From Macrostomum lignano (lineage: Eukaryota), in assembly GCA_002269645.1 (NCBI GenBank), contig NIVC01000446.1, positions 434,001-498,000 on the forward strand: DNA of 64,000 nucleotides, written 5' to 3'. Shown in pieces: positions 29,486 to 64,000 of this stretch. The translations under genes were made by a program, and so were the position numbers. Position 1 is the first letter of the stretch, and each line of letters begins with the position of its first letter. The notes under the pieces are model-generated. The model saw only the letters and a program-made list of their open reading frames with translations, made no database searches and was not told where the DNA came from.

Positions 29486-29514
29486 GTAGGCTTTGTCTTG
29501 TCTGGTTTAGGGTT

Positions 29515-37820: not shown

Positions 37821-37845
37821 GTGAGACAGTTTTAATTCTCTCAGC

Positions 37846-40600: not shown

Positions 40601-40648
40601 TAGATGCAGCAAGCAGCATCCCCGACTACTCGTGAACCTACTCCGCAG

Positions 40649-44136: not shown

Positions 44137-47100
44137 GCTCTCAGCTTCAAATGGCTGCCAGCTTCAAATGACTGTCAGCTTCAAATGGCTCTCAGCTTCA
44201 AATGGCTCTCAGCTTCAAATGGCTGCCAGCTTCAAATGGCTCTCAGCTTCAAATGGCTGCCAGCTTCAAATGACTGTCAGCTTCAAATGGCTCTCAGCTT
44301 CAAATGGCTCTCAGCTTCAAATGGCTGCCAGCTTCAAATGGCTCTCAGCTTCAAATGGCTGCCAGCTTCAAATGACTGTCAGCTTCAAATGGCTCTCAGC
44401 TTCAAATGGCTCTCAGCTTCAAATGGCTGCCAGCTTCAAATGACTGTCAGCTTCAAATGGCTCTCAGCTTCAAATGGCTGTCAGCTTCAAATATCTGTCA
44501 GCTTCAAATGACTGTCAGCTTCAAATGGCTGCCAGCTTCAAATGACTGTCAGCTTCAAATGGCTCTCAGCTTCAAATGGCTGCCAGCTTCAAATGACTGT
44601 CAGCTTCAAATGGCTCTCAGCTTCAAATGGCTGTCAGCTTCAAATGACTGTCAGCTTCAAATGACTGTCAGATTCAAATGGCTGCCAGCTTCAAATGACT
44701 GTCAGCTTCAAATGGCTCTCAGCTTCAAATGGCTCTCAGCTTCAAATGGCTGCCAGCTTCAAATGGCTCTCAGCTTCAAATGGCTGCCAGCTTCAAATGA
44801 CTGTCAGCTTCAAATGGCTCTCAGCTTCAAATGGCTCTCAGCTTCAAATGTCTGTCAGCTTCAAATGTCTGTCATCTTCAAATGTCTGTCAGCTTCAAAT
44901 GTCTGTCAGCTTCAAATGTCTGCCAGCTTCAAATGTCTGTCAGCTTCAAATGGCTCTCAGCTTCAAATGGCTGCCAGCTTCAAATGACTGTCAGCTTCAA
45001 ATGGCTCTCAGCTTCAAATGGCTCTCAGCTTCAAATGTCTGTCAGCTTCAAATGTCTGTCATCTTCAAATGTCTGTCAGCTTCAAATGTCTGTCAGCTTC
45101 AAATGTCTGTCAGCTTCAAATGTCTGCCAGCTTCAAATGTCTGTCAGCTTCAAATGGCTCTCAGCTTCAAATGGCTGCCAGCTTCAAATGACTGTCAGCT
45201 TCAAATGCCTCTCAGCTTCAAATGGCTCTCAGCTTCAAATGTCTGTCAGCTTCAAATGTCTGTCATCTTCAAATGTCTGTCAGCTTCAAATGTCTGTCAG
45301 CTTCAAATGTCTGTCAGCTTCAAATGTCTGCCAGCTTCAAATGGCTCTCAGCTTCAAATGGCTGCCAGCTTCAAATGACTGTCAGCTTCAAATGGCTCTC
45401 AGCTTCAAATGGCTCTCAGCTTCAAATGGCTGCCAGCTTCAAATGACTGTCAGCTTCAAATGGCTCTCAGCTTCAAATGGCTGTCAGCTTCAAATATCTG
45501 TCAGCTTCAAATGACTGTCAGCTTCAAATGGCTGCCAGCTTCAAATGACTGTCAGCTTCAAATGGCTCTCAGCTTCAAATGGCTGCCAGCTTCAAATGAC
45601 TGTCAGCTTCAAATGGCTCTCAGCTTCAAATGGCTCTCAGCTTCAAATGGCTGCCAGCTTCAAATGGCTCTCAGCTTCAAATGGCTGCCAGCTTCAAATG
45701 ACTGTCAGCTTCAAATGGCTCTCAGCTTCAAATGGCTCTCAGCTTCAAATGGCTGCCAGCTTCAAATGACTGTCAGCTTCAAATGGCTCTCAGCTTCAAA
45801 TGGCTGTCAGCTTCAAATATCTGTCAGCTTCAAATGACTGTCAGCTTCAAATGGCTGCCAGCTTCAAATGACTGTCAGCTTCAAATGGCTCTCAGCTTCA
45901 AATGGCTGCCAGCTTCAAATGACTGTCAGCTTCAAATGGCTCTCAGCTTCAAATGGCTGTCAGCTTCAAATGACTGTCAGCTTCAAATGACTGTCAGATT
46001 CAAATGGCTGCCAGCTTCAAATGACTGTCAGCTTCAAATGGCTCTCAGCTTCAAATGGCTCTCAGCTTCAAATGGCTGCCAGCTTCAAATGGCTCTCAGC
46101 TTCAAATGGCTGCCAGCTTCAAATGACTGTCAGCTTCAAATGGCTCTCAGCTTCAAATGGCTCTCAGCTTCAAATGTCTGTCAGCTTCAAATGTCTGTCA
46201 TCTTCAAATGTCTGTCAGCTTCAAATGTCTGTCAGCTTCAAATGTCTGCCAGCTTCAAATGTCTGTCAGCTTCAAATGGCTCTCAGCTTCAAATGGCTGC
46301 CAGCTTCAAATGACTGTCAGCTTCAAATGGCTCTCAGCTTCAAATGGCTCTCAGCTTCAAATGTCTGTCAGCTTCAAATGTCTGTCATCTTCAAATGTCT
46401 GTCAGCTTCAAATGTCTGTCAGCTTCAAATGTCTGTCAGCTTCAAATGTCTGCCAGCTTCAAATGTCTGTCAGCTTCAAATGGCTCTCAGCTTCAAATGG
46501 CTGCCAGCTTCAAATGACTGTCAGCTTCAAATGCCTCTCAGCTTCAAATGGCTCTCAGCTTCAAATGTCTGTCAGCTTCAAATGTCTGTCATCTTCAAAT
46601 GTCTGTCAGCTTCAAATGTCTGTCAGCTTCAAATGTCTGTCAGCTTCAAATGTCTGCCAGCTTCAAATGGCTCTCAGCTTCAAATGGCTGCCAGCTTCAA
46701 ATGACTGTCAGCTTCAAATGGCTCTCAGCTTCAAATGGCTCTCAGCTTCAAATGGCTGCCAGCTTCAAATGACTGTCAGCTTCAAATGGCTCTCAGCTTC
46801 AAATGGCTGTCAGCTTCAAATATCTGTCAGCTTCAAATGACTGTCAGCTTCAAATGGCTGCCAGCTTCAAATGACTGTCAGCTTCAAATGGCTCTCAGCT
46901 TCAAATGGCTGCCAGCTTCAAATGACTGTCAGCTTCAAATGGCTCTCAGCTTCAAATGGCTGTCAGCTTCAAATGACTGTCAGCTTCAAATGACTGTCAG
47001 ATTCAAATGGCTGCCAGCTTCAAATGACTGTCAGCTTCAAATGGCTCTCAGCTTCAAATGGCTCTCAGCTTCAAATGGCTGCCAGCTTCAAATGGCTCTC

Positions 47101-50100
47101 AGCTTCAAATGGCTGCCAGCTTCAAATGACTGTCAGCTTCAAATGGCTCTCAGCTTCAAATGGCTCTCAGCTTCAAATGTCTGTCAGCTTCAAATGTCTG
47201 TCATCTTCAAATGTCTGTCAGCTTCAAATGTCTGTCAGCTTCAAATGTCTGTCAGCTTCAAATGTCTGCCAGCTTCAAATGTCTGTCAGCTTCAAATGGC
47301 TCTCAGCTTCAAATGGCTGCCAGCTTCAAATGACTGTCAGCTTCAAATGGCTCTCAGCTTCAAATGGCTCTCAGCTTCAAATGTCTGTCAGCTTCAAATG
47401 TCTGTCATCTTCAAATGTCTGTCAGCTTCAAATGTCTGTCAGCTTCAAATGTCTGTCAGCTTCAAATGTCTGCCAGCTTCAAATGTCTGTCAGCTTCAAA
47501 TGGCTCTCAGCTTCAAATGGCTGCCAGCTTCAAATGACTGTCAGCTTCAAATGCCTCTCAGCTTCAAATGGCTCTCAGCTTCAAATGTCTGTCAGCTTCA
47601 AATGTCTGTCATCTTCAAATGTCTGTCAGCTTCAAATGTCTGTCAGCTTCAAATGTCTGTCAGCTTCAAATGTCTGTCAGCTTCAAATGTCTGCCAGCTT
47701 CAAATGTCTGTCAGCTTCAAATGGCTCTCAGCTTCAAATGGCTGCCAGCTTCAAATGACTGTCAGCTTCAAATGGCTCTCAGCTTCAAATGGCTCTCAGC
47801 TTCAAATGTCTGTCAGCTTCAAATGTCTGTCATCTTCAAATGTCTGTCAGCTTCAAATGTCTGTCAGCTTCAAATGTCTGTCAGCTTCAAATGTCTGCCA
47901 GCTTCAAATGTCTGTCAGCTTCAAATGGCTCTCAGCTTCAAATGGCTGCCAGCTTCAAATGACTGTCAGCTTCAAATGCCTCTCAGCTTCAAATGGCTCT
48001 CAGCTTCAAATGTCTGTCAGCTTCAAATGTCTGTCATCTTCAAATGTCTGTCAGCTTCAAATGTCTGTCAGCTTCAAATGTCTGTCAGCTTCAAATGTCT
48101 GCCAGCTTCAAATGGCTCTCAGCTTCAAATGGCTGCCAGCTTCAAATGACTGTCAGCTTCAAATGGCTCTCAGCTTCAAATGGCTCTCAGCTTCAAATGG
48201 CTGCCAGCTTCAAATGACTGTCAGCTTCAAATGGCTCTCAGCTTCAAATGGCTGTCAGCTTCAAATATCTGTCAGCTTCAAATGACTGTCAGCTTCAAAT
48301 GGCTGCCAGCTTCAAATGACTGTCAGCTTCAAATGGCTCTCAGCTTCAAATGGCTGCCAGCTTCAAATGACTGTCAGCTTCAAATGGCTCTCAGCTTCAA
48401 ATGGCTCTCAGCTTCAAATGGCTGCCAGCTTCAAATGGCTCTCAGCTTCAAATGGCTGCCAGCTTCAAATGACTGTCAGCTTCAAATGGCTCTCAGCTTC
48501 AAATGGCTCTCAGCTTCAAATGGCTGCCAGCTTCAAATGACTGTCAGCTTCAAATGGCTCTCAGCTTCAAATGGCTGTCAGCTTCAAATATCTGTCAGCT
48601 TCAAATGACTGTCAGCTTCAAATGGCTGCCAGCTTCAAATGACTGTCAGCTTCAAATGGCTCTCAGCTTCAAATGGCTGCCAGCTTCAAATGACTGTCAG
48701 CTTCAAATGGCTCTCAGCTTCAAATGGCTGTCAGCTTCAAATGACTGTCAGCTTCAAATGACTGTCAGATTCAAATGGCTGCCAGCTTCAAATGACTGTC
48801 AGCTTCAAATGGCTCTCAGCTTCAAATGGCTCTCAGCTTCAAATGGCTGCCAGCTTCAAATGGCTCTCAGCTTCAAATGGCTGCCAGCTTCAAATGACTG
48901 TCAGCTTCAAATGGCTCTCAGCTTCAAATGGCTCTCAGCTTCAAATGTCTGTCAGCTTCAAATGTCTGTCATCTTCAAATGTCTGTCAGCTTCAAATGTC
49001 TGTCAGCTTCAAATGTCTGTCAGCTTCAAATGTCTGCCAGCTTCAAATGTCTGTCAGCTTCAAATGGCTCTCAGCTTCAAATGGCTGCCAGCTTCAAATG
49101 ACTGTCAGCTTCAAATGGCTCTCAGCTTCAAATGGCTCTCAGCTTCAAATGTCTGTCAGCTTCAAATGTCTGTCATCTTCAAATGTCTGTCAGCTTCAAA
49201 TGTCTGTCAGCTTCAAATGTCTGTCAGCTTCAAATGTCTGCCAGCTTCAAATGTCTGTCAGCTTCAAATGGCTCTCAGCTTCAAATGGCTGCCAGCTTCA
49301 AATGACTGTCAGCTTCAAATGCCTCTCAGCTTCAAATGGCTCTCAGCTTCAAATGTCTGTCAGCTTCAAATGTCTGTCATCTTCAAATGTCTGTCAGCTT
49401 CAAATGTCTGTCAGCTTCAAATGTCTGTCAGCTTCAAATGTCTGCCAGCTTCAAATGTCTGTCAGCTTCAAATGGCTCTCAGCTTCAAATGGCTCTCAGC
49501 TTCAAATGGCTGCCAGCTTCAAATGACTGTCAGCTTCAAATGGCTCTCAGCTTCAAATGGCTGTCAGCTTCAAATATCTGTCAGCTTCAAATAACTGTCA
49601 GCTTCAAATGGCTCTCAGCTTCAAATGGCTGCCAGTTTCAAATGACTGTCAGCTTCAAATGGCTATCAGCTTCAAATGGCTCTCAGCTTCAAATATCTGT
49701 CAGCTTCAAATGACTGTCAGCTTCAAATGGCTGCCAGCTTCAAATGACTGTCAGCTTCAAATGGCTCTCAGCTTCAAATGGCTGCCAGCTTCAAATGACT
49801 GTCAGCTTCAAATGGCTCTCAGCTTCAAATGGCTGTCAGCTTCAAATGACTGTCAGCTTCAAATGGCTGCCAGCTTCAAATGACTGTCAGCTTCAAATGG
49901 CTCTCAGCTTCAAATGGCTCTCAGCTTCAAATGGCTGCCAGCTTCAAATGGCTCTCAGCTTCAAATGGCTGCCAGCTTCAAATGACTGTCAGCTTCAAAT
50001 GGCTCTCAGCTTCAAATGGCTCTCAGCTTCAAATGTCTGTCAGCTTCAAATGTCTGTCATCTTCAAATGTCTGTCAGCTTCAAATGTCTGTCAGCTTCAA

Positions 50101-51515
50101 ATGTCTGTCAGCTTCAAATGTCTGCCAGCTTCAAATGTCTGTCAGCTTCAAATGGCTCTCAGCTTCAAATGGCTGCCAGCTTCAAATGACTGTCAGCTTC
50201 AAATGCCTCTCAGCTTCAAATGGCTCTCAGCTTCAAATGTCTGTCAGCTTCAAATGTCTGTCATCTTCAAATGTCTGTCAGCTTCAAATGTCTGTCAGCT
50301 TCAAATGTCTGTCAGCTTCAAATGTCTGCCAGCTTCAAATGTCTGTCAGCTTCAAATGGCTCTCAGCTTCAAATGGCTGCCAGCTTCAAATGACTGTCAG
50401 CTTCAAATGGCTCTCAGCTTCAAATGGCTCTCAGCTTCAAATGTCTGTCAGCTTCAAATGTCTGTCATCTTCAAATGTCTGTCAGCTTCAAATGTCTGTC
50501 AGCTTCAAATGTCTGTCAGCTTCAAATGTCTGCCAGCTTCAAATGTCTGTCAGCTTCAAATGGCTCTCAGCTTCAAATGGCTGCCAGCTTCAAATGACTG
50601 TCAGCTTCAAATGGCTCTCAGCTTCAAATGGCTCTCAGCTTCAAATGTCTGTCAGCTTCAAATGTCTGTCATCTTCAAATGTCTGTCAGCTTCAAATGTC
50701 TGTCAGCTTCAAATGTCTGTCAGCTTCAAATGTCTGCCAGCTTCAAATGTCTGTCAGCTTCAAATGGCTCTCAGCTTCAAATGGCTGCCAGCTTCAAATG
50801 GCTCTCAGCTTCAAATGACTGTCAGCTTCAAATGGCTCTCAGCTTCAAATGGCTGTTAGCTTCAAATGTCTGTCAGCTTCAAATGGCTGTCAGCTTCAAA
50901 TGTCTGTCAGCTTTAAATGTCTGTCATCTTCAAATTGCTGTCAGCTTCAAATGGCTGTCAGCTTCAAATGGCTGTCAGTCAAATGTCTGTCAGCTTCAAA
51001 TGGCTGTCAGTCAAATGTCTGTCAGCTTCAAATGTCTGTCATCTTCAAATGGCTGTCAATCAAATGTCTGTCAGCTTCAAATGGCTGTCAGCTTTAAATG
51101 TCTGTTATCTTCAAATGGCTGTCAGTCAAATGTCTGTCAGCTTCAAATGTCTGTCATCTTCAAATGGCTGTCAGTCAAATGTCTGTCAGCTTCAAATGTC
51201 TGTCATCTTCAAATGGCTGTCAGTCAAATGTCTGTCAGCTTCAAATGTCTGTCATCTTCAAATGGCTGTCAGTCAAATGCCTGTCAGCTTCAAATGTCTG
51301 TCATCTTCAAGTGGCTGTCAGTCAAATGTCTGTCAGCTTCAAATGTCCGTCATCTTCAAGTGGCTGTCAAGTCAAATGGCTGTCATCTTCAAGTGGCTTC
51401 AAATGCCAGTCAGATGGCTGTCAGCTTCAAATGTCTGTCATCTTCAAGTGGCTGTCAGTCAAATGGCTGTCAGTGAAATAGCTGTCAGTCAAATGGCTGT
51501 CAGCTTTAAATGCTT
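44137..51515 (+). repeat. 17-bp satellite (CAGCTTCAAAT-GGCTCT/GGCTGC/GACTGT/GTCTGT) with higher-order repeats
   Basis: ~7.4 kb intergenic array; rare variants recur at exact multiples of 17. Confidence 0.97.
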
Positions 51516-51557: not shown

Positions 51558-52546
51558 TACCTTTTCAACTTCGGATTCGTCAAAAGTGAGTTCAAATTCG
51601 TCAGCGTATGCACAACTATATAGCGCTCAAGGGGAAGAGAATGAGTGTCTATGGAAATTTTTAGAGAAAGTGACTTCGAATTCGTTTAAGTAAGTGAAAT
51701 TCGTCAGTGCAAATGCAGCCTGATCAGAAAAAGTGTCTGCTTTGTCCATGGTAAGAAAAGGTGTCTATGGTAAATTTAAGTAAGAAAGTGAGTGAATTTC
51801 GTCTGTGGAAAAGTAGCCCAATTTCTTGAAATCTTCATCTCATGCTTTGATTGTTGTCAGGGATGCCCTATATGACAATTTCGTCTGTGGATCGCTCTAG
51901 ACTCGTGCGATGTTTTCAACAAGGGCGAGACTGGAGAAAACTCGCTATTGAACTGGATATCAAGAGGACAACTGCCAGTGACATCATCAGGAGATATTTT
52001 GATGAGGGTAGGATTGATCTTAACGTGAGTGGAGGTGCAGTGAGACCAAAGTTTTCTGAGGGGGTGCTCGGGGCGTTGACGAGGTATGTGGAAGAGAAGC
52101 CGACTGTGACCCTCAAAGAAATGCAGCAAAAGCTTGTTGCAGATTTTCCTGCTGCTCCTGCTGTGACAACGCAGGCAACCAGTCGTCGGCTTGACGGGAC
52201 TTTGTGCGTTACATTGGCTGTTTGTTGTCATGTAGGGCATCTCTGACAACAATCAAAGCATGAAATGAAGATTTCAAGAAATTGGGCTACTTTTCCACAG
52301 ACGAACTTCACTCACTTTCTTACTTAAATTTACCACAGACACCTTTTCTTACCATGGACAAAGCAGACACTTTTTCTGATCAGGCTGCATTTGCACTGAC
52401 GAATTTCACTTACTTAGACGAATTTGAAGTCACTTTGTCTAAAAATTTACCATAGACACTCCTTCTCTTCCCCTTGAGCTCTATATAGTTTTGCATACGC
52501 TGACGAATTTGAACTCACTTTTGACGAATCCAAAGTTGAAAAGGTA
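51558..52546 (+). mobile_element. Tc1/mariner (IS630-like) deletion derivative with ~320-bp inverted arms
   Basis: TA|TACCTTTTCAAC ... GTTGAAAAGGTA|TA; arms about 51558-51878 and 52225-52546; centre encodes a bipartite HTH. Confidence 0.85.
51863..52246 (+). pseudogene. Truncated Tc1-like transposase (DNA-binding domain only)
   Basis: WRKLAIELDIKRTTASDIIRRY (HTH), GGAVRPK (GRPR-like linker), YVEEKPTVTLKEM (second HTH); no DDE domain. Confidence 0.75.
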
Positions 52547-53562
52547 TATTAAACCAAAATTTTAGTTATCTCATTAGTTAGTCAAATGTCACCATAGGGA
52601 TTAGAGATTTATGGCAAATAAATATCGCGAATTTCAATAATAGTCTGATGGCGCAGCGATGTATGATGAATTGTATATTTAGTCTATAATTATGTGTGTT
52701 ATCTACGGTTACAATGTAAGAGTTCAGCCTCTCATTTGATATTCTCCATAGCAATACGAATAGCGCTATTGTTTTGTTGTTACGATAGAGAAACTTGCGA
52801 TAAAAATGAATGAAAAAATCGAAATGTCTGAAATGGCGAAAGGCAATGAAGCTGATGAAACTTGCTCTAAAGGTTAGATAGGCTTTACTAGCAAATGACA
52901 CACTGGGAGAGCTGCAGTTGCAACTCGAACTCTTGATATAGGAATCTGCTATTAGATATCTAATCTCGCCTCCTTCATAAATATGCGCAGCCGCACCGCT
53001 CTCCCAATGTGGTGCATGGTGAAAAAATGGTCGAAATTCGAGTTTTTAATAGTCAAGAACAAGATCGAAAAAAGTACATCATCCCGTAAGATGAGAGCGA
53101 AATGGCAAGCGAAATTGTTTAGCGGGTGAAACCAAAGATCATATATACACAAGATGGGCCACTCATTAACCGCCTATGTGGCGGCTATAGAAGCTAATTT
53201 AAAAAAAATTTGCATCTCGCGACAGCGCGAAAATCAACTACTGAACTTAATTTCGTCAGTAGTCTCTGCAGTGAATTCATGTGAATTCACCATTCTTAGT
53301 TCAATTGAGTAGTTTTTAAATTATTTCATGAGAAGTTTTATTAAACTCTCAAAAATAGCTTCTATGTCCCTAAGCTACTGAACTCAAAATTTAAGCAACC
53401 CATGTGTCGGCTTTTTTCGCACAAGTGACGAAAAACAGCGGTCGCACTTTCCCTACAGCCGCAATACAAAGTGGCCTATCTAGGGAATATAAGATCTATG
53501 GGTGAAACCGAAAAAAACATCAGAAAAATCTGCAAAATTTCAGTCAGCCAGGCTGTGCGGCC

Positions 53563-54408
53563 TCACTTCTGGCCAGCCTGCACTTTGTACTCGAGCAGAG
53601 TGCGGAATTTCTTCGCGTCGCCCTCGGCATAGTTCGCGCACACGGCTACGCGACTGGCGCCTGGCTGGGCCGCCGCGGCGAGGCTGACCCGGCCCAGCCA
53701 CTGACCGGCGGCCTGCGACGACGGCTTCAGCGACGTCCAGGACTCGCCGCAGACAACGGAAACGGCTCGAGCCTCGGGCACGATGAGGCTGAAGTCGACA
53801 GCGCGATCGCTGGCTGCCAGCTGGCCGCTGGTTGGGCTGCGCAGCGAGCAGCCCTCAGACCAGGCAGCGAACTGCAGCGGGTAGCGCGGGCCGGCGCCGC
53901 TGCGAGCCAACCAGGCGCTGGAATCGGCGCTCCGCTTCGGTGCACAGATTAGCAGCTGCCACAGGTTGGCCAAATTGTCGTGCTTCTCAGTGGCTGGCAG
54001 GCCGAATATCACCAGCTTGTAGTAGCCGGGGGCGGGCAGCCACACGCGGAAGGAGGCGGCGCCGTCATTCTGCCGAATCTCCTGCAGCACGCAGTCGGAG
54101 CTGCAGGTGCTGCTCTGAGAGCCCGAAGCGGCCAAGCGGACCAGGTGCGCCGCTAGTCGCAGGGGCCGATCGGGTTTCATCGAGAACTCGAACGCGGGGT
54201 CGTCGCCGACTGGCTGTTTGCTTGAAACCAGCGGGTCCTCGTGCGAGGTGCACGCGAGGCCGAACTCGGCAGCCTTCTGCGTGCCGCCAAGGTGCCCAGG
54301 CGGCTGATGAAGCGCCTCGGAAGCGTCTGTGCCGCGGCGGCAGACCAGCAGAAGTTGCTGCACCAAGTGCAGCCGGTCTCCATCCTGGGGTCTGCCACCA
54401 GCGTACAC
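53563..54408 (-). CDS. KY/Hillarin-like gene, last exon (C-terminal beta-sandwich repeats)
   Basis: CATTTCAG acceptor; splice gives GLHVLE|VYAGG; FRVWLPAPGYYKLVIFG; stop at 53563. Confidence 0.85.
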   Translation of the reverse strand: MYAGGRPQDGDRLHLVQQLLLVCRRGTDASEALHQPPGHLGGTQKAAEFGLACTSHEDPLVSSKQPVGDDPAFEFSMKPDRPLRLAAHLVRLAASGSQSSTCSSDCVLQEIRQNDGAASFRVWLPAPGYYKLVIFGLPATEKHDNLANLWQLLICAPKRSADSSAWLARSGAGPRYPLQFAAWSEGCSLRSPTSGQLAASDRAVDFSLIVPEARAVSVVCGESWTSLKPSSQAAGQWLGRVSLAAAAQPGASRVAVCANYAEGDAKKFRTLLEYKVQAGQK

Positions 54409-54532
54409 CTGAAATGAGCAAATGCAAACAACGGTAACTGTAGAATATCTTACTTATTAAAAAGGAAGATTGCAGGAAAACTTGAAAAGCCAAATCCAGT
54501 GCATGTGCACAGCAAGAAAGAAAAGGGTTGCG

Positions 54533-54900
54533 CCAGGCCGATAAACAGTTGGGCTTTCCTCTTGCCCGCTGGTGCCTGACTTTGACATCTCCTTATTGCT
54601 TGGATTGGATTGGGCCTGCTTCCTAGGCTTAGTTTTGTCCGTCTGATTTTGGCTTCTCTCCTTACTGCTCTCTCATTGGCTGAGCGGGAGATTAGGCCTG
54701 CCCCCTAGGCCGATTTTCGTCCGTATTGCATTCACTTGTGCACATCGAGTTATATGCTTGTCGTACTTAACCCAATATGCTCCTTAGGCGGCAAACCCAG
54801 AGGAAGGAAAGGAAATTTTAGCTGCCACATTAAATTTAAGTAACACTGCGCAGACAAGCTACTAAATAAAGAGTAGAGGCTCTACTTTTCACACATCTAA
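54533..54900 (+). mobile_element. Dispersed repeat, copy 2 (two internal units)
   Basis: Homologous to 33836-34415; lies in the last intron of the KY-like gene. Confidence 0.75.
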
Positions 54901-55101
54901 TCACAAATTCTAACTAGAGAGAAGAAGACGGCAAGGTCAGACACCAACATACCTCGTGGGCATTCTACTCGTAGAATTCTGTTTCATATGCTGTTTCCGC
55001 TTCCTGCACCGCTTCTTTCTGATTAATCCTTGACTAACCCACAACAAAGCTTTCGTACAAATTTAGGTCTATAAATAAATAATAAGTACTCAGCCGCTCA
55101 C

Positions 55102-56570
55102 CTCCAGAACGTGCAGGCCGTCTGTAGGCGGCAGCGGCCGCACCAGCAGGTGTCCGGCAGCCATCCGAACGATGCAGGATGCGCTATCCGCCAGCCTGCC
55201 AGCGGCCTGCTGCGCCTGCTGGTCGCAGCCGCGTAGCTTCACAACGTAGCGCAGGCGTTCGGCAGCGCGACTGGACAGCTTGAATCGGACATCCTCGGCC
55301 TGGCCGTCGGTCACCTCTACGATTGGCAGCGGCATGTCCACGCCTTCGCCCGCCGTGACCGCCGTCAGATTGAAGCCGCCCATGGCTGACCAGTTGGCAT
55401 CGGCAGGGCCATAGCCGGAGGTCTGGCACAGGGGGAAGGACGGTACAGTTTGATCGACTTCCGCGTTGATTTGATACACGCAGACTGACTCGAACACGGC
55501 GCTCTGCTGTTGCTGCTTTTGAGCAGTCTGGGCGAGGTCTCTGGCGTAAATCGTTAGTTTCCAAGTTCCAGTGGAAGGTGGCCGCGCCGCCACCACAAGA
55601 CAGGAGTAGCGCCTGTCGAACAGGTGCAAAACTCGGTGCTTGACTGAAGCTGCTTTAGCGGCGGTAGACTTGGATTCTGGGCTCAGAGTGGCGATGAAGC
55701 TCAGGCGGCCAGCCAGGCCTGGCGGGACGCCAATTCGGATGATCAACGCCGGGGACAGAGGCGCCAGCTGCAGGTCCTCGTCAGCTGCGCCTGGCCGGCT
55801 GGAGCGCCACTGAATGGTCGATTCCGGATGCGACCGCAGCTCCAGGCCGTATTTAAAAAAGGCGTTTTTCACCTGCGCCAGGGCATTGAAGCGTTCGATT
55901 GTCAGCGGCTTCTCCAGCAGCTGCCAGCTGGCTCGGTCGGGAAAGTGGGTGAACACGAACTGGGCCGGCCTGGCCAAGAAGTAGAACTCATCCAGCTGCC
56001 TGTCGCCAGCCTCCTGCTGCTGTTTGCCGCCGCTTCGATAACCGCGCGCAGCCCAGAAGCTGTCAATCAGGCGCCAGCTGCCGTTGAGGCGGACGGCGTT
56101 CCACAGGTGCACGGCGTCGCCAATGGCCGGATCTCTCGGTCCGCCGCGCACCGAGCCTTGGACGAGCCGGCAGTCCAGGCCGAAGGCGCGGCACAGGAGC
56201 CGCAGCGCGACTGCCATCGCTGCGCGACCCTCGACGGCAGCGGAGAGCAGCGCCTCAGCGGATTGCGGCTCCCGCTGCACCGGACAGGCATCCGGAGTGG
56301 CCAGGCAGAGCCAGACGAAAGCGAGACGCAGCCGCTCCATCAAGTCGGTGACGTTGGGCTGGCCAACCAGCTGCCAGACCAGCTCGCGTAGGTCCGACGG
56401 CTTTGTGCGGCCCTCAGCCAGTCTCTGCGCGTGAGCGTCCACCGCTGCCAACTGTTCCAGCGATAGCCGGCCAACTGCGGGCACGGCGTCTTGCTCCGGT
56501 TCCGCATCGGCATCTTCTGCTAGCAGATTGCTTGGCAGCTTGAACTTTTTTGGTGGTTTGCTCGGCGTGA
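55102..56570 (-). CDS. Transglutaminase-like (KY peptidase/Hillarin/LTD-1 family) core exon
   Basis: TTGCAG acceptor, phase 1; LCRAFGLDCRLVQG, HLWNAVRLNGSWRLIDSFW, FYFLARPAQFVFTHFPDRASWQLLEKP are family motifs; GAG|GTGAGC donor, phase 0. Confidence 0.88.
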
Positions 56571-56946
56571 CTGCAATTGTTTGGCACGGGGATCGTGTAC
56601 AAAAAGTCAATATTCGCATGGGTTGCGGGCACCCTTGTACACACGCTCACACAGGGTGTACATGTGATCTTTGACTCTCTAATCGTCAGGCATGTACTCC
56701 GTGCCTTGGGGGTTGGCCCTCAAGGCTGTGAATCGCATGACGACCCCCTCCCCAGGGCGAGTTTTCGTGCACGCAAGCTCCAAATGAATGCAGCCGCGCA
56801 CGAACTCGAGCCCGGGTCTCAGCTCGAGTATCCGACACGATAACCTCAGAGCTACACCAGCCCCTGTACAGAATGTGCATGTATGTACCACAACACCGAG
56901 ACAATATTTGATAGATTAACTGCCACAGAAGGCAGGACTTCCTCAC

Positions 56947-56988
56947 CGCATTTCCCGTACTCTCCTGTGGCCTTCCACGACCGAGACT
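56947..56988 (-). CDS. KY/Hillarin-like gene, 42-nt micro-exon
   Basis: CATTTTCCAG acceptor, GTGAGG donor; (K)SRSWKATGEYGKC; phase 1-1. Confidence 0.65.
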
Positions 56989-57057
56989 CTGGAAAATGAC
57001 ACGAATTTCTTTAGGAAGCTGCGCATTTGTGGCTCTGGAACATGTTGAATAACTTAC

Positions 57058-57124
57058 TCTCGTCAGCGCACTCTTGTAGGCAGGAGAGGACGGATGGAAA
57101 ACTTTCAGAGGAGAATGCTTGGTC
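57058..57124 (-). CDS. KY/Hillarin-like gene, 67-nt micro-exon
   Basis: TTTAATTTCAG acceptor, GTAAGT donor; DQAFSSESFPSVLSCLQECADE; phase 0-1. Confidence 0.7.
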
Positions 57125-57217
57125 CTGAAATTAAAGAAATTCTCCAGCGTTTTCTTTTCAATCCAAAAGCGCCTACCACCGAATGTACTTTGAAGAGTAA
57201 AAAAACTCCTCACTCAC

Positions 57218-60200
57218 CTCTTCGCCCATGTCACCAACTTGGAATCCTGAGTACCACCCCGAATAAGCCGACTGCGATAGAGACGTGGCGTGATGATGAA
57301 TATTCTGGTTGAGCTCCTCAGCAACTGAGGCGTCAGACTTCACTTCTCCGAACATGAACAGCTCCCTGGCTGCCCGGCGCCGCTTCTCATAAATATCCTC
57401 TTCCGGGTTGGATGCGGTGGAGCCCATTGTCCGAACTTTCTTCGTCTTCGACTGCTCCTCGATTTCTGTAGCACCCGATTTCTGTTCCTGGCTCTGCGAC
57501 TCCAAGCTACCAGCTCCGCTGCCTTTTGACCTCCACCAGTAGCTGATGCTCAAGTACTTCGCTATGCCCTGCGATTCCTTGGTTTCTTCAGACGTCTCAG
57601 CTGTTTCAGTTTTCGATGCATCTACCTCGGTTTCCTCCGAAGTAACGTCTGACGCTTCGGTCTCCTGAGTTGACGTTTTGTAGATGGTTTTCTCCTGCAG
57701 AGTTGAGCGCCTTGTAGCCAGTCGGGAAGACATCTGAATAGTAGTGTCCACTGAGGTATCGACTGAGATGGCTGTGCTGTCCATTGTAGTGGTTACATGC
57801 TCGTGAAGGGATTCAGATTGTCCCTGGTTAAAATCTCCAATGAGCAGCTGAGATTCGTGAACAGATAGAGTAGAGTCAAAGTCTTGAAACTCAGTGGTCT
57901 CCTGAGTCTGCTCAAACTCAGTGGTCCCATCAGTCTGCTCGATCTCAGTGGTCCCCTGAGTCTGGTCGATCTCAGTGGTCTCTTCAGCCTGCTCGAACTC
58001 AGTGGTCTCTTCAGCCTGCTCGAACTCAGTGGTCTCTTCAGCCTGCTCGAACTCAGTGGTTCGAACTCGAACCTCAGTTTGCTCGAACTCAGTGGTCTCT
58101 TCAGCCTGCTCGAACTCAGTGGTCTCTTCAGCCTGCTCGAACTCAGTGGTTCGAACTCGAACCTCAGTTTGCTCAAACTCAGTGGTCTCTTCAGCCTGCT
58201 CGAACTCAGTGGTCTCTTCAGCCTGCTCGAACTCAGTGGTCTCTTCAGCCTGCTCGAACTCAGTGGTCTCTTCAGCCTGCTCGAACTCAGTGGTCTCTTC
58301 AGCCTGCTCGAACTCAGTGGTCTCCTGAGTCTGCTCGAACTCAGTGGTCTCTTCAGCCTGCTCGAACTCAGTGGTCTCCTCAGTTTGCTCGAACTCAGTG
58401 GTCTCTTCAGCCTGCTCGAACTCAGTGGTCTCTTCAGCCTGCTCGAACTCAGTGGTCTCCTCAGTCTGCTCGAACTCAGTGGTCTCTTCAGCCTGCTCGA
58501 ACTCAGTGGTCTCCTGAGTCTGCTCGAACTCATTGGTCTCTTCAGTCTGGTCGATCTCAGTGGTCTCCTCAGTCTGCTCGAACTCAGTGGTCTCTTCAGT
58601 CTGGTCGATCTCAGTGGTCTCCTCAGTCTGCTCGAACTCAGTGGTCCCCTGAGTCCACTCGAACTCAGTGATCTCAGTGGGCTCCTGAGTCTGCTCGATT
58701 TCAGTGGTCTCCTCACTAGTCGCCATCTTTGTTTTCCTTTCTAGTTCGGTGTTGCCTTGAGTCGCACTTTCAAGTGCTTTGGATTTTCCTTTTCTCGACC
58801 GCTTCTTTTTGCGTCCTCCTGCCTGCTCTGATGCCGAAGCACCTTGCGATTGTTTTTCCTGCTCCCTCGCTCCAGACTTTCGCACCACAGTTGTCACTGT
58901 TTCCACTGTGGTCACGGTTTCTGTCCTCTGCTCAGCTTCCAGGGAGTCGCTTTGCCGGCTTGCCGAGTCAGTAGCGTCCAAAGACTTCGAAAAGTCGTTG
59001 CCCTTCTTTTTGATTCGCCGATAAGCCCACGAATCGGTGTATTTGGTCTCGCCAGCCTCCTCGTATTCCTCATCAGAAGTGATGATGCCTTCGTCAAATT
59101 GTGAGTCAGTGTCAATGCATCGAATGTATTTCTCTACACTCGAAGTCTCCTCAATTGTCTGAGAAATTTGCTTCGTCTCCTCAGCTGTCCGGTTGATGTC
59201 TGTTTTAGTCTGCTGAATTTGTTTGTCTTCCTTCTGTCTGGTGGAAATTCCGCGCACCGTGGTTAGACTTTTGACATCAAACTGATTGGCATAGTGGCCA
59301 GTCAATGTTGAAATTTTTCTGTAGTCAGATTCAGCAGGCCATACACTGCCAATTTCAACCGTTTGTTTAGCTTTCGTTTCGGTAGCCGCTCCGATTTCAC
59401 TCTCAGAAGCAGTCTCGACCTGTTTCGACGTTTCGATAGTAAGATATTCGGTCTCCAGAGACTCTTCGGTGGGTATGTTATCGGTGGATCTACGATGAAG
59501 CACTACGAAGGAGTCTGCCTCGTCTGCATCCCGTTTAGTCCTGACCGCAGATCCGATGAGGCCGGTCTCGTACCTGTCAGAGTCGGTCTCAATCTTTGCA
59601 ATGGTAACGGTACTTCCGCTCTGAACTCTCCACTCTCCGGTCTGACTAACGACAGTCTTCTGAGTGACAGTGGCGGATGTCGTAGTCGTACTAGAGCTGG
59701 TGGTCGAAGCTTTGGATTCAAAACTTTCAACAGTGGCAACGCCGCAAACTGCTCTGAGGCTTGCCGGGTCAACTTGTCGAGCGTGATGACTTGTGAGCGA
59801 CGATATCTGTCGGTAGTCGGCGACGGGAAGATCCCTTTCACTCACTCTTGCAACCTTCTTATCGCCGTCAACAACAGAGCTACGGGAGCTTGTCTTTGTT
59901 GTTGATATTGAGGTCAGCGAAGTCGATGAAACGGGTTTACCAGATTCGGTTGTTCGAGTTTCACTACCACCGGAGACAAAGACGGTTTTATTGGTTCCTG
60001 CAGCACCAGTTTTGTTTTTAAAGAAAATTTCTAAACTGTTTGAATCGCTTCTTCTAACGTAATGGCTAGCTAGGGTCGAAATAAAAACATAATTCGAAGC
60101 AGGCTTGAACACGTCTTCAGTACTAGCTGTCACATTCAGTTTAGAACACTTCTCTATGCTCCTGATTGCGTCAGAAGCCCGCTCAGTCCTATCAGAAGTA

Positions 60201-63200
60201 TCAGTAGTCTTCTCAGTTGTCTCCTCAGTGGTCTGCTCGATCCCAGGAGAAGTCTCAATGGTCTCCTCAGTGGTTTGCTCGATTTCCTGAGAAGTATCAA
60301 TGGTCTCAGTTGTCTCCTCGGTGGTCTGCTCAATCTCAGTAGTCTCAATTGTCTCCTCAGTGGTCTGCTCGATCTCCTGAGAAGTCTCAATGGTCTCCTC
60401 AGTTGTCTCCTCGGTGGTCTGCTCGATCTCCTGAGAAGTCTCAATGGTCTCCTCAGTTGTCTCCTCGGTGGTCTGCTCGATCTCCTGAGAAGTCTCAATG
60501 GTCTCCTCAGTGGTCTGCTCGATCTCCTGAGAAGTCTCAATGGTCTCCTCAGTGGTCTGCTCGATCTCCTGAGAAGTCTCAATGGTCTCCTCAGTTGTCT
60601 CCTCGGTGGTCTGCTCGATCTCCTGAGAAGTCTCAATGGTCTCTTTAGTTGTCTCCTCGGTGGTCTGCTCGATCTCCTGAGAAGTCTCAATGGTCTCCTC
60701 AGTGGTCTGCTCGATCTCCTGAGAAGTCTCAATGGTCTCCTCGGTTGTCTGACCAATGTCAGTTGTATCTATGGTCTGCTCAATGGTCTGCCCGATAATC
60801 TGCTGTGTCCCAGAGTTCGTACTGGTGACCCTTCCTGTCTCTGTAGTCACTGAGTCCACTATTCGGTTTCTTTTAATTTTGTAGATTTCCGTCTCGAAGT
60901 AAAAGTCGCTGCTTTCAACGGACTTCTCTGAGCCGCTAACTGTTGTTAGCAGCTCAGTCGATTCTTCGATGTTTCGAGAACCTCTGCACCGGAACTCTCC
61001 GAAAGATTCTGTCTCTCTGCCAGTGGATGTGCCGGTTATAACGTAGGCATAGCCAGCGACTTCAGAATCGTCCGAGTTGACTGAGGCATGCGTTGATGCT
61101 GTTGTCCTTTTTCTGGACTCCTCAACGGTTTTCTCGATCTCCTGAGACGTCTCAATTGTCTCCTCAGTTGTCTCCTCGGTGGTCTGCTCGATCTCAGTAG
61201 TCTCAATGGTCTCCTCAGTTGTCTCTTTAGAGGTCTGCTCAATCTCCTGAGAAGTCTCAATGGTCTCCTCAGTTGTCTCCTCGGTGGTCTGCTCGATCTC
61301 CTGAGAAGTCTCAATGGTCTCCTCAGTTGTCTCCTCGGTGGTCTGCTCGATCTCCTGAGAAGTCTCAATGGTCTCCTCAGTTGTCTCCTCGGTGGTCTGC
61401 TCGATCTCCTGAGAAGTCTCAATGGTCTCCTCAGTTGTCTCCTCGGTGGTCTGCTCGATCTCCTGAGAAGTCTCAATGGTCTCCTCAGTGGTCTGCTCAA
61501 ACTCCCGAGAAGTCTCAATGGTCTCCTCAGTTGTCTCTTTAGAGGTCTGCTCGATCTCCTGAGAAGTCTCAATGGTCTCCTCAGTTGTCTCTTTAGAGGT
61601 CTGCTCAATCTCCTGAGAAGTCTCAATGGTCTCCTCAGTTGTCTCTTTAGAGGTCTGCTCAATCTCTTGAGAAGTCTCAATGGTCTCCTCAGTTGTCTCC
61701 TCGGTGGTCTGCTCGATCTCCTGAGAAGTCTCAATGGTCTCCTCAGTTGTCTCCTCGGTGGTCTGCTCGATCTCCTGAGAAGTCTCAATGGTCTCCTCAG
61801 TTGTCTCCTCGGTGGTCTGCTCGATCTCCTGAGACGTCTCAATGGTCTCCTCAGTTGTCTCCTCGGTGGTCTGCTCGATCTCCTGAGAAGTCTCAATGGT
61901 CTCCTCAGTAGTCTCCTCAGTGGTCTGCTCAATCTCTTGAGAAGTCTCAATGGTCTCCTCAGTTGTCTCCTCGGTGGTCTGCTCGATCTCCTGAGAAGTC
62001 TCAATGGTCTCCTCAGTTGTCTCCTCGGTGGTCTGCTCGATCTCCTGAGAAGTCTCAATGGACTCCTCAGTTGTCTCCTCGGTGGTCTGCTCGATCTCCT
62101 GAGAAGTCTCAATGGTCTCCTCATTTGTCTCCTCGGTGGTCTGCTCGATCTCCTGAGAAGTCTCAATGGTCTCCTCAGTTGTCTCCTCGGTGGTCTGCTC
62201 GATCTCCTGAGAAGTCTCAATGGTCTCCTCAGTGGTCTGCTCGATCTCCTGAGAAGTCTCAATGGTCTCCTCAGTGGTCTGCTCAAACTCCCGAGAAGTC
62301 TCAATGGTCTCCTCAGTTGTCTCCTCGATCTCCTGAGAAGTCTCAATGGTCTCCTCAGTGGTCTGCTCGATCTCCTGAGAAGTCTCAATGGTCTCCTCGG
62401 TTGTCTGACCAATGTCAGTTGTATCTATGGTCTGCTCAATGGTCTGCCCGATAATCTGCTGTGTCCCAGAGTTCGTACTGGTGACCCTTCCTGTCTCTGT
62501 AGTCACTGAGTCCACTATTCGGTTTCTTTTAATTTTGTAGATTTCCGTCTCGAAGTAAAAGTCGCTGCTTTCAACGGACTTCTCTGAGCCGCTAACTGTT
62601 GTTAGCAGCTCAGTCGATTCTTCGATGTTTCGAGAACCTCTGCACCGGAACTCTCCGAAAGATTCTGTCTCTCTGCCAGTGGATGTGCCGGTTATAACGT
62701 AGGCATAGCCAGCGACTTCAGAATCGTCCGAGTTGACTGAGGCATGCGTTGATGCTGTTGTCCTTTTTCTGGACTCCTCAACGGTTTTCTCGATCTCCTG
62801 AGACGTCTCAATTGTCTCCTCAGTTGTCTCCTCGGTGGTCTGCTCGATCTCCTGAGAAGTCTCAATGGTCTCCTCAGTAGTCTCCTCAGTGGTCTGCTCA
62901 ATCTCTTGAGAAGTCTCAATGGTCTCCTCAGTTGTCTCCTCGGTGGTCTGCTCGATCTCCTGAGAAGTCTCAATGGTCTCCTCAGTTGTCTCCTCGGTGG
63001 TCTGCTCGATCTCCTGAGAAGTCTCAATGGTCTCCTCAGTTGTCTCCTCGGTGGTCTGCTCGATCTCCTGAGAAGTCTCAATGGTCTCCTCAGTTGTCTC
63101 CTCAGTGGTCTGCTCGATCTCCTGAGAAGTCTCAATGGTCTCCTCAGTAGTCTCCTCAGTGGTCTGCTCAATCTCTTGAGAAGTCTCAATGGTCTCCTCA

Positions 63201-64000
63201 GTTGTCTCCTCGGTGGTCTGCTCGATCTCCTGAGAAGTCTCAATGGTCTCCTCATTTGTCTCCTCGGTGGTCTGCTCGATCTCCTGAGAAGTCTCAATGG
63301 ACTCCTCAGTTGTCTCCTCGGTGGTCTGCTCGATCTCCTGAGAAGTCTCAATGGTCTCCTCAGTTGTCTCCTCGGTGGTCTGCTCGATCTCCTGAGAAGT
63401 CTCAATGGTCTCCTCAGTTGTCTCCTCGGTGGTCTGCTCGATCTCCTGAGAAGTCTCAATGGTCTCCTCAGTGGTCTGCTCGATCTCCTGAGAAGTCTCA
63501 ATGGTCTCCTCAGTTGTCTCCTCGGTGGTCTGCTCGATCTCCTGAGAAGTCTCAATGGTCTCCTCAGTTGTCTCCTCGGTGGTCTGCTCGATCTCCTGAG
63601 ACGTCTCAATGGTCTCCTCAGTGGTCTGCTCGATCTCCTGAGAAGTCTCAATGGTCTCCTCGGTTGTCTGACCAATGTCAGTTGTATCTATGGTCTGCTC
63701 AATGGTCTGCCCGATAATCTGCTGTGTCCCAGAGTTCGTACTGGTGACCCTTCCTGTCTCTGTAGTCACTGAGTCCACTATTCGGTTTCTTTTAATTTTG
63801 TAGATTTCCGTCTCGAAGTAAAAGTCGCTGCTTTCAACGGACTTCTCTGAGCCGCTAACTGTTGTTAGCAGCTCAGTCGATTCTTCGATGTTTCGAGAAC
63901 CTCTGCACCGGAACTCTCCGAAAGATTCTGTCTCTCTGCCAGTGGATGTGCCGGTTATAACGTAGGCATAGCCAGCGACTTCAGAATCGTCCGAGTTGAC
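57218..64000 (-). CDS. Giant Glu/Thr-rich repeat exon of KY/Hillarin-like gene (5' end outside window)
   Basis: One open frame from the window edge to 57218 (>=2261 codons). Repeat-length variants keep frame (42/54-nt and 27-nt units). Ends GAG|GTGAGT, phase 0. Confidence 0.8.

What the first reader, a model, noticed from the sequence alone, without database searches (positions are those of the whole stretch)
53563..64000. Giant acidic repeat protein fused to a KY/Hillarin transglutaminase-like module
A chain of canonical splice sites with matching phases (57218, 57124-57058, 56988-56947, 56570-55102, 54408-53563) joins >=2261 residues of Glu/Thr-rich, probably extended polyanionic sequence to a ~750-aa KY-type region. 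Known relatives (KY, Hillarin/LTD-1, fungal Cyk3) carry short, LIM or SH3 N-termini as far as I recall, and act as muscle or cytokinesis scaffolds. This architecture could be a new spacer or spring-like cytoskeletal protein. It is the strongest novelty candidate in the window.
Basis: partly seen in the sequence, partly recalled or inferred. Interest (0 to 1): 0.75.

Follow-up and report, generated by a model that had tools for sequence, protein, structure and literature searches.

The report
Giant acidic repeat protein with KY module
A flatworm (Macrostomum lignano) gene most likely joins a very long, strongly acidic Glu/Thr-repeat region to an inactive transglutaminase-like "KY/hillarin" scaffold module; the module is ordinary, the acidic part has no detectable relatives, and no transcript yet shows that the two parts are joined.

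Summary
On the minus strand one frame stays open from 64000 to 57173. It encodes at least 2261 residues (25% Glu, 23% Thr, net charge about -480). The five proposed exons have GT..AG borders at the stated coordinates and splice into one 3068-codon frame that stops at 53563.

Exons 4-5 encode a genuine KY-type module: Transglut_core, four Ig-like_KY stretches, a confident AF2 model and 4248 relatives. The nucleophile Cys is missing, as in its nearest hillarin-like relatives, so it is probably a binding scaffold and not an enzyme. The organism is Macrostomum lignano. A partial UniProt model, A0A1I8FY85, already joins the end of the repeat exon to the KY exons.

The fusion is likely, about 0.6, but unproven. 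The donor AG|GTGAGT at 57218 is the only such site in the 6.9-kb exon and is in the right phase. There is no poly(A) signal before exon 4. Against it, the M. lignano spliced leader ends in ATG and exon 2 begins in phase 0, so an 808-aa KY-only mRNA is possible. GC3 also jumps from about 0.5 to about 0.78.

The novelty claim is overstated. KY modules already occur behind LIM, kinase, CH, FERM and vWA domains, and behind N-terminal extensions of 1860-3000 aa. The polyanionic repeat itself has no homologues.

The parts
57218..64000 (-). Exon 1, 5'-incomplete because it runs off the window. It encodes 2261 codons of Glu/Thr-rich sequence and ends at the donor GAG|GTGAGT.
   Evidence: One frame is open across both repeats and unique stretches. 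The consensus donor is unique within the exon.
60211..63664 (-). Three arrays of the 54-nt / 18-aa unit TTEETTEETIETSQEIEQ, with a 14-aa variant. They lie at about 62789-63664, 61133-62401 and 60221-60745. They sit inside a higher-order tandem repeat with unit lengths of 1263 and 1656 nt.
   Evidence: TRF rows 61133-63632 and 60211-60751. A looser pattern finds 49 units, 36 of them full 18-aa units. Their differences from the consensus fall mainly on codon position 3. AF2 draws the array as a long helix at pLDDT 74-85; charge-hydropathy says disordered.
60746..61132 (-). Non-repetitive block of about 129 aa within the higher-order repeat (KTVEESRKR...DSVTTETGRV...DIGQ). Further copies lie at 62402-62788 and, cut by the window edge, at 63665-64000.
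   Evidence: The copies are 100% identical at DNA level over 408 nt, and over 354 nt for the cut copy. Pfam finds nothing significant (only CENP-H at E 0.076, below its cut-off). AF2 pLDDT is below 50.
58721..60220 (-). Unique middle region of about 500 aa, near neutral charge. It holds three copies of a ~25-aa motif P..[DN]Y..IS[ST]L[TA][SG]H[YH]....D..SL (aa 1303, 1395, 1559) and a basic cluster GGRKKKRSRKGKSK.
   Evidence: No homologue turned up in the 5.8-billion-protein search and there is no Pfam hit.
57888..58675 (-). Array of the 27-nt / 9-aa unit EETTEFEQ[AT], about 28 copies.
   Evidence: TRF: period 27, 28.5 copies, 86% matches. 24 units match the pattern.
57425..57427 (-). In-frame ATG that opens MGSTASNPEED. 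This is a possible internal start with an N-myristoylation-like motif and would give an 877-aa short isoform.
   Evidence: One search lists the in-frame Met positions. Family members P0016, P0061, P0128 and P0129 start with MG...S/T. This is inference only.
57125..57217 (-). Intron 1 (93 nt). If it is retained, the giant ORF ends at TAG 57175-57173 (...GDMGEEVSEEFFYSSKYIRW*).
   Evidence: There is no AATAAA or ATTAAA between 57175 and 56571.
57058..57124 (-). Exon 2 (67 nt, DQAFSSESFPSVLSCLQECADE). Its acceptor TTTCAG| is in phase 0, so it is also usable as an SL trans-splice acceptor that takes its ATG from the spliced leader.
   Evidence: The SL sequence and the [T/C]TNCAG motif are from PMC8629364. 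The peptide has no homologues and the exon is unverified.
56947..56988 (-). Exon 3 (42 nt, (K)SRSWKATGEYGKC). Skipping it keeps the frame.
   Evidence: The exon is unverified, and the public model P0001 omits it.
55102..56570 (-). Exon 4. It holds the start of the KY module (conserved KPPxxFKL motif), the transglutaminase-like core (about 56062-56274) and Ig-like_KY domains 1-2. His (AVHLWNAV) and Asp (LIDSFW) are kept; the nucleophile Cys is absent (Arg in its column).
   Evidence: Pfam, core alignment, HMMER relatives and the AF2 model at pLDDT 83.
53563..54408 (-). Exon 5. It holds Ig-like_KY domains 3-4 and the stop TGA at 53565-53563.
   Evidence: Relatives align right to the C-terminus.
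53337..53342 (-). AATAAA, about 220 nt after the stop; the likely poly(A) signal of the gene.

Best explanation
This is one Macrostomum lignano gene on the minus strand, with its 5' end beyond 64000. It encodes a protein of at least 3068 aa in two parts.

(i) The N-terminal part is a lineage-specific, recently expanded polyanionic region. It contains three 18-aa Glu/Thr repeat arrays inside a higher-order tandem repeat. After these come a 500-aa unique region with three copies of a short linear motif and a basic cluster, a 9-aa repeat array, and a 220-aa tail.

(ii) The C-terminal part is a single KY/hillarin-type module: a transglutaminase-like core plus four Ig-like_KY domains.

The core lacks the nucleophile Cys. 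It most likely acts as a protein-binding anchor, as shown for Cyk3 and proposed for hillarin, LTD-1 and KY, and not as an enzyme. The module would tether the long acidic chain to a cytoskeletal structure (actin, septin, Z-disc-like or axonemal). There the chain would act as a charged spacer, brush or cation-binding element.

Shown: the ORF, the repeats, the splice-compatible chain, the identity and fold of the module, the missing Cys, and the absence of homologues for the N-terminal region.

Inferred: that exons 1-5 lie on one mRNA, that exons 2 and 3 are used as drawn, and all functional statements.
For: - The ORF is continuous across non-repetitive segments in one frame only.
- Variation among repeat units is biased to the third codon position.
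- The donor AG|GTGAGT at 57218 is the only such site in the 6.9 kb around exon 1 and one of 3 in 128 kb. It lies 45 nt before the stop, in the phase that fits the next acceptor.
- There is no poly(A) signal between the retained-intron stop and exon 4, whereas AATAAA follows the KY stop.
- Exon 4 opens exactly at the conserved start of the module and has no in-frame Met for 75 codons.
- Pfam finds Ig-like_KY (7e-27) and Transglut_core.
- There are 4248 HMMER relatives. The best non-self hits are hillarin-like double-module proteins (E 1e-96 to 4e-101) that align over nearly the whole module.
- AF2 gives pLDDT 83 and pTM 0.78. The best solved fold is FAP246 of the ciliary C1b projection, E 4e-15.
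- The Cys is absent while His and Asp are kept.
- Catalytically inactive TGc domains act as binding modules in Cyk3, and hillarin and LTD-1 are implicated in cytokinesis and the cytoskeleton (PMC3718969).
- UniProt A0A1I8FY85 (M. lignano) joins the same exon-1 tail to the KY exons through the same intron 1.
- Relatives with N-terminal extensions of about 1000 to 3000 aa ahead of a C-terminal KY module exist.
Against: - No transcript, EST or peptide evidence was reachable.
- GC3 rises from 0.47-0.57 in the unique parts of exon 1 to 0.74-0.81 in the KY exons, with different codon preferences. That would suit two genes or a recent fusion.
- The M. lignano SL ends in ATG and the exon-2 acceptor is in phase 0. 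About 30-39% of genes are trans-spliced and about 7% of assembled transcripts are polycistronic.
- The peptides of exons 2 and 3 have no homologues.
- The public model looks ab initio, not transcript-derived.
- The N-terminal region has no homologue anywhere, so nothing outside this genome shows that it is expressed.
Confidence: 0.6

Rival explanations
1. Two cistrons lie in one transcription unit. The giant acidic protein ends at TAG 57175-57173 and intron 1 is not removed. The KY gene is SL trans-spliced at 57124 and takes its AUG from the 3' end of the spliced leader, giving an 808-aa KY-only protein (M+DQAFSSE...).
For: - The SL sequence ends in ...TTGCATG and the preferred trans-acceptor motif [T/C]TNCAG fits TTTCAG at 57124.
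- Exon 2 starts in phase 0. Exons 3 and 4 do not, and they run into stops if read from an SL-ATG.
- Operons and trans-splicing are common in this species.
- Codon usage and GC3 break between the two parts.
- Single-module relatives with short N-termini exist, for example P0009 at 701 aa.
Against: - A perfect cis donor sits 93 nt upstream in the matching phase. Its chance occurrence there is of the order of 1e-3. An acceptor with a cis donor upstream is normally cis-spliced (Conrad et al. 1993, as cited in PMC8629364).
- Only 49 nt separate the stop from the acceptor, with no AATAAA or ATTAAA.
Confidence: 0.2
2. The main product is a short isoform of about 877 aa that starts at the in-frame Met of MGSTASNPEED (ATG 57427-57425), from an internal promoter. 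It would be N-myristoylated like several family members. The upstream repeat region would be translated rarely or only in a minor isoform.
For: MGSTAS fits the G-{EDRKHPFYW}-x(2)-[STAGCN]-{P} myristoylation pattern, cited from general knowledge. P0016 (MGCGATK), P0061 (MGCGGST), P0128 (MGTGGSK) and P0129 (MGCGSSH) begin this way. The context acaATGG resembles a Kozak site.
Against: 2191 codons upstream are open in the same frame across unique sequence, which is hard to explain unless they are translated. There is no polypyrimidine/AG acceptor or other signal upstream of this ATG. The pattern is short and common.
Confidence: 0.1
3. The repeat region is not a functional coding sequence. It would be a minisatellite-rich stretch, a decaying pseudo-exon, or an assembly artefact of collapsed or expanded repeats that happens to be open.
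For: The window holds several other minisatellites that are open in many frames on both strands and a 7.4-kb 17-nt satellite. The higher-order repeat copies are 100% identical. The region has no homologues.
Against: About 1100 codons of non-repetitive sequence are open in one frame only; for 500 random codons alone the chance is about 4e-11. Variation among units is biased to the third position. The exon-1 tail is 100% identical over 272 aa in the independent ML2-derived model.
Confidence: 0.05

Closest known systems
Hillarin-type double-module proteins (leech and Drosophila hillarin; here P0002, P0003, P0005 and P0006, 1194-1296 aa)
   Same: These are the best sequence relatives, at 31-34% identity and E 1e-96 to 4e-101 over nearly the whole 771-aa module. 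They share the order TGc core plus Ig-like_KY domains, the KPPxxFKL start motif, and loss of the catalytic Cys with His and Asp kept.
   Different: They carry two modules in tandem and a short N-terminus. The window protein has one module and at least 2261 aa of acidic repeats. The match is to their second module.
Giant LIM-KY proteins (C. elegans LTD-1 class; here P0077 at 3534 aa and P0025 at 2383 aa), plus P0145 at 2888 aa, where no LIM domain was detected
   Same: They have a C-terminal KY module behind a 1860-3000-aa, largely non-globular and partly repetitive N-terminal extension. This shows that 'giant extension plus KY' already exists as an architecture.
   Different: P0077 and P0025 start with a LIM domain. 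The extensions are near neutral (net charge per residue 0 to -0.045, against -0.21 here), and their repeats are unrelated. In their cores His is replaced by Asn and Asp by Asn. The window's N-terminus is not visible, so a LIM domain cannot be excluded.
Vertebrate KY (kyphoscoliosis peptidase)
   Same: It has the same Pfam pair, Transglut_core plus Ig-like_KY, and a cytoskeletal (Z-disc, filamin C) context (papers; general knowledge).
   Different: KY is about 660 aa with a short N-terminus and is reported to keep the catalytic triad (from memory, not tested here). The window's core lacks the Cys.
Fungal Cyk3
   Same: It has a catalytically inactive transglutaminase-like domain that works by binding (Rho1-GDP) (PMC3718969). 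This is the best mechanistic precedent for a pseudo-enzyme anchor.
   Different: It was not among the hits compared here.
FAP246 (Chlamydomonas C1b projection of the ciliary central apparatus; PDB 7n6g, 7sqc)
   Same: It is the only solved structure found that matches both the papain/transglutaminase-like core and the following beta-sandwich chain (sequence E 1.3e-8; Foldseek E 4e-15 over 690-790 columns).
   Different: It has LRR and EF-hand domains in place of acidic repeats (bioRxiv 10.1101/2021.06.16.448709). Identity is 13-16% and the global TM-score is low (0.22-0.24).

Membership tests
KY/hillarin-type transglutaminase-like module family (Pfam PF01841 + PF23265) | Transglutaminase-like core domain detected above the curated threshold | tested here: met
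   PF01841 scores 25.2 bits against a cut-off of 23, E 2.1e-5, at residues 207-277 of the 878-aa query. The margin is small.
KY/hillarin-type transglutaminase-like module family (Pfam PF01841 + PF23265) | KY-like Ig-like domains after the core | tested here: met
   PF23265 scores 94.5 bits against a cut-off of 27, E 7.4e-27, in 4 stretches. The AF2 model shows four beta-sandwich units after the core, pLDDT 83.
KY/hillarin-type transglutaminase-like module family (Pfam PF01841 + PF23265) | End-to-end homology of the module with family members | tested here: met
   P0003 matches at E 3.8e-101 over query 32-765, P0006 over 4-765 and P0007 over 5-766. There are 4248 hits at E<=1e-3. All eight nearly invariant alignment columns are kept.
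Catalytically competent transglutaminase/papain-like enzymes | Cys-His-Asp triad | tested here: not met
   The column that holds Cys in P0024 (GRAVCSGYA) holds Arg in the window (AVEGRAAMA), and no Cys lies nearby. His (VHLWNAV) and Asp (LIDSFW) are kept.
Hillarin proper | Two tandem W180/KY modules | tested here: not met
   The window has a single module, and there is no second Pfam hit in the 2261 upstream residues. Sequence 5' of 64000 is unknown.
LTD-1 / LIM-KY proteins | N-terminal LIM domain | not testable with these tools
   The N-terminus lies beyond the window edge. No LIM domain was found in the parts scanned. No eukaryotic genome collection was available to extend the locus.
Cyk3 | N-terminal SH3 domain with a single TGc domain | tested here: inconclusive
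   No SH3 hit was found in the scanned parts, and the N-terminus is not visible. The module here carries Ig-like_KY domains and groups with metazoan hillarin-like proteins.

The most novel reading that the evidence does not exclude
The gene makes a single protein of more than 3000 aa. A recently expanded polyanionic chain found only in this lineage (net charge about -480) would form either an extended brush or long single helices of 18-residue (five-turn) periodicity. A pseudo-transglutaminase KY module would moor it to the cytoskeleton or axoneme. That would be a new type of charged spacer, ruler or cation-buffering element with no homologue outside Macrostomum.
Probability: 0.3. Interest if true: 0.5.

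Novelty: new variant of a known kind. Interest (0 to 1): 0.33.

Why it matters
KY-family proteins (KY, hillarin, LTD-1, Cyk3) are poorly understood cytoskeletal scaffolds, and KY is a human myopathy gene. If the fusion is real, three things follow.

- It adds an extreme example to the family's pattern of a C-terminal KY module placed behind varied N-terminal regions.
- It shows a giant protein region built very recently by tandem duplication; the 408-nt blocks are 100% identical.
- It gives M. lignano, a transgenic and RNAi-tractable model, a handle on what KY modules bind.

It does not open a long-standing question. The general architecture already exists elsewhere, so the value is modest and depends on transcript confirmation.

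Tried and rejected
1. Word-indexed homologue searches gave only P0001 and P0002 when the query was the KY module plus the exon-1 tail, and only P0001 with the KY module alone. The full HMMER scan solved this.

2. A search with the unique middle region (aa 1257-1760) found nothing.

3. Exact-sequence look-ups of exon 5, the exon-4 ORF and P0001 in assembly collections found nothing.

4. Literature searches for Macrostomum with kyphoscoliosis, hillarin or transglutaminase found nothing relevant.

5. I first argued that the KY exons must need an upstream start codon and therefore must be fused. I withdrew this after reading that the M. lignano SL donates an ATG.

6. P0001 does not count as independent support for the fusion. 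Its 1-nt deletion, non-consensus donor and frameshifted stretches indicate an ab initio model on an error-prone assembly.

7. BLAST self-comparison of the middle region found no larger internal domain repeats beyond the three short motifs.

8. Rfam found nothing in the window.

9. A coiled-coil reading of the 18-aa unit is not supported. Only two hydrophobic residues occur per 18, spaced 6 and 12 apart (direct inspection).

Full report
**The observation**

On the minus strand a single frame is open from the window edge at 64000 to a TAG at 57175-57173. Position 64000 is codon position 1, and the ORF continues beyond the window.

I read the proposed borders base by base and joined them in a script. 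Exon 1 ends at 57218 before GTGAGT. The remaining exons are exon 2 (57124-57058), exon 3 (56988-56947), exon 4 (56570-55102) and exon 5 (54408-53563). All have AG acceptors and GT donors. The phases are 0/0/1/1/0. The joined 9207-nt CDS has one stop, the terminal TGA at 53565-53563, and encodes 3068 aa.

Exon 1 contributes 2261 residues with 24.7% Glu and 22.9% Thr and a net charge of -479.

**Anatomy of exon 1**

It contains the following parts, from 5' to 3'.

- Three arrays of a 54-nt / 18-aa unit, TTEETTEETIETSQEIEQ, with a 14-aa variant (TRF; units counted). They sit inside a higher-order tandem repeat with unit lengths of 1263 and 1656 nt.
- A non-repetitive block of about 129 aa within each higher-order unit. 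The copies are 100% identical at DNA level over 408 nt, which indicates very recent duplication or homogenisation.
- A unique region of about 500 aa with near-neutral charge. It holds three copies of a ~25-aa motif (P..[DN]Y..IS[ST]L[TA][SG]H[YH]....D..SL) and a basic cluster GGRKKKRSRKGKSK.
- A 27-nt / 9-aa array (EETTEFEQ[AT], about 28 copies).
- A unique tail of about 220 aa.

**Is exon 1 coding?**

The arrays alone cannot show it. They are open in several frames on both strands, and so are unrelated minisatellites at 24.0-25.4 kb and 37.7-40.8 kb. However, only one frame also crosses about 1100 codons of non-repetitive sequence. In addition, differences among the 18-aa units fall mainly on third codon positions (32 of 47). 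I conclude that exon 1 is, or very recently was, protein-coding.

**The C-terminal part**

Pfam finds Ig-like_KY (PF23265, 94.5 bits, four stretches) and Transglut_core (PF01841, 25.2 bits, just above its cut-off). A full HMMER scan of 1.84 billion representatives gives 4248 relatives. The best non-self hits are double-module, hillarin-like proteins of 1194-1296 aa. They are 31-34% identical, with E from 1e-96 to 4e-101, and their second module aligns over almost the entire 771 residues.

An AF2 model built on 24 sequences is confident (pLDDT 83, pTM 0.78). It shows an alpha/beta core followed by four beta-sandwich domains. The only solved structure that matches both core and beta-sandwich chain is FAP246 of the Chlamydomonas C1b central-apparatus projection.

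In an alignment of the cores, the column that holds the nucleophile Cys in P0024 holds Arg in the window. His and Asp are retained. The nearest hillarin-like relatives also lack the Cys. The module is therefore most likely a non-catalytic binding domain. This was shown for Cyk3 and has been discussed for hillarin and LTD-1 (PMC3718969).

**Organism and prior annotation**

The only near-identical protein is UniRef A0A1I8FY85, a 'TGc domain-containing protein' of Macrostomum lignano. The window is therefore from this free-living flatworm.

That 1061-aa partial model already joins the last 290 residues of exon 1 to the KY exons through the same intron 1. However, it carries a 1-nt deletion near the end of exon 1. 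It reads exon 2 in another frame, uses a non-consensus GTGCGC donor and skips exon 3. It also has two further frameshifted stretches. It looks like an ab initio model on an error-prone assembly, so I do not count it as transcript evidence.

**Are the two parts one gene?**

Evidence for one gene:

- AG|GT[AG]AGT occurs once in the 6.9 kb around exon 1, exactly at 57218. It occurs three times in 128 kb of both strands. Finding it 45 nt before the ORF's stop, in the phase that fits the next acceptor, has a chance of the order of 1e-3.
- No AATAAA or ATTAAA lies between the retained-intron stop and exon 4, whereas AATAAA follows the KY stop by about 220 nt.
- Exon 4 opens within five residues of the conserved KPPxxFKL start of the module. 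It has no in-frame Met for 75 codons.

Evidence against:

- The M. lignano spliced leader ends in ATG, and the favoured trans-acceptor motif [T/C]TNCAG fits TTTCAG at 57124 (PMC8629364).
- Exon 2 starts in phase 0, so SL trans-splicing there would yield an 808-aa KY-only protein. Exons 3 and 4 cannot be used this way.
- Trans-splicing (30-39% of genes) and polycistronic precursors (about 7% of transcripts) are common in this species.
- GC3 jumps from 0.47-0.57 in the unique parts of exon 1 to 0.74-0.81 in the KY exons.
- An in-frame MGSTAS... at 57427 resembles the MG...S/T N-termini of several family members. A short isoform is therefore conceivable.

Weighing these, I put the single-gene reading at about 0.6, the two-cistron reading at about 0.2, and the short isoform as main product at about 0.1. 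A non-functional or artefactual repeat gets about 0.05. Exons 2 and 3 are unverified, and skipping the 42-nt exon 3 stays in frame.

**Likely mechanism**

The KY module is a pseudo-enzyme anchor that binds a cytoskeletal partner. This is inferred from the family and was not tested. The N-terminal chain is a long polyanion.

Charge-hydropathy places every exon-1 segment on the disordered side, and the arrays far on that side. Single-sequence AF2 gives pLDDT below 50 for the unique parts but draws the 18-aa array as one continuous helix at pLDDT 74-85. Eighteen residues is five helical turns. However, the lack of Lys/Arg partners and the high Thr content argue against a stable single helix. Extended brush or long helix therefore remains open. 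A role as spacer, spring or cation binder is speculation.

**Comparison and novelty**

It does not hold. Among the top 150 representatives the module follows a protein kinase (P0008), CH domains (P0012), FERM (P0024) and vWA (P0019). It also follows very long extensions: P0077 (3534 aa, LIM plus about 30-aa repeats), P0145 (2888 aa) and P0025 (2383 aa, LIM).

What is unusual here is the nature of the extension. Net charge per residue is -0.21, against 0 to -0.045 in those proteins. The extension has no homologues and shows signs of very recent expansion.

I rate it a new variant of a known kind. It is of modest interest and depends on transcript confirmation, which public M. lignano RNA-seq, SL-read and poly(A) tracks could give quickly.

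Noticed in passing
window 44135-51512: A 7.4-kb satellite of a 17-nt unit (TGGCTGTCAGCTTCAAA, about 435 copies, 90% matches) lies about 2 kb 3' of the KY gene's stop. It produces many overlapping ATG ORFs on the + strand.
   Followed up: partly
window 51851-52252: Near-palindromic 131-aa ORFs lie on both strands. The + ORF hits HTH_23 and PAX (paired-box-like HTH). It is probably the N-terminal fragment of a Tc1/mariner-type transposase, or an inverted duplication of one.
   Followed up: partly
window 14-877 (+): An ORF with a strong rhodopsin-family GPCR match (7tm_1, E 1.8e-51).
   Followed up: no
window 28832-29530 (+): An ORF that matches liprin-alpha-like coiled-coil domain 2 (PF25526, E 1.6e-27), probably one exon of a liprin gene.
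   Followed up: no
window 24056-25389 and 37744-40798: Two further minisatellite arrays are open for 400-555 codons in several frames on both strands (for example the RVAVTTYSKG and [10 protein letters not shown] units). This shows that long ORFs over arrays are not evidence of coding in this genome.
   Followed up: partly
window 53563-56570 versus 57218-60220: There is a sharp codon-usage break inside the proposed gene. GC3 is 0.74-0.81 in the KY exons and 0.47-0.57 in the unique parts of exon 1; for example, GCC+GCG make up 68% against 28% of Ala codons. This is unexplained. It is compatible with a recent fusion or with two genes.
   Followed up: partly
window 60746-61132, 62402-62788, 63665-64000: The non-repetitive blocks of the higher-order repeat are 100% identical at DNA level (0 differences in 408 nt and in 354 nt). 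This implies very recent duplication, gene conversion, or an assembly effect on copy number.
   Followed up: partly
window about 59250-60100 (aa 1303, 1395, 1559) and about 58775-58816 (aa 1729-1742): A ~25-aa linear motif, P..[DN]Y..IS[ST]L[TA][SG]H[YH]....D..SL, occurs three times in the unique middle region. An NLS-like basic cluster, GGRKKKRSRKGKSK, is also present. No known domain or partner was identified.
   Followed up: partly
L001 (Logan SRR16288329 contig, 3897 nt): This is a complete transcript that encodes a 1265-aa double KY-module (hillarin-like) protein. In the word-indexed search it is the only relative besides P0001. Its organism was not identified.
   Followed up: partly
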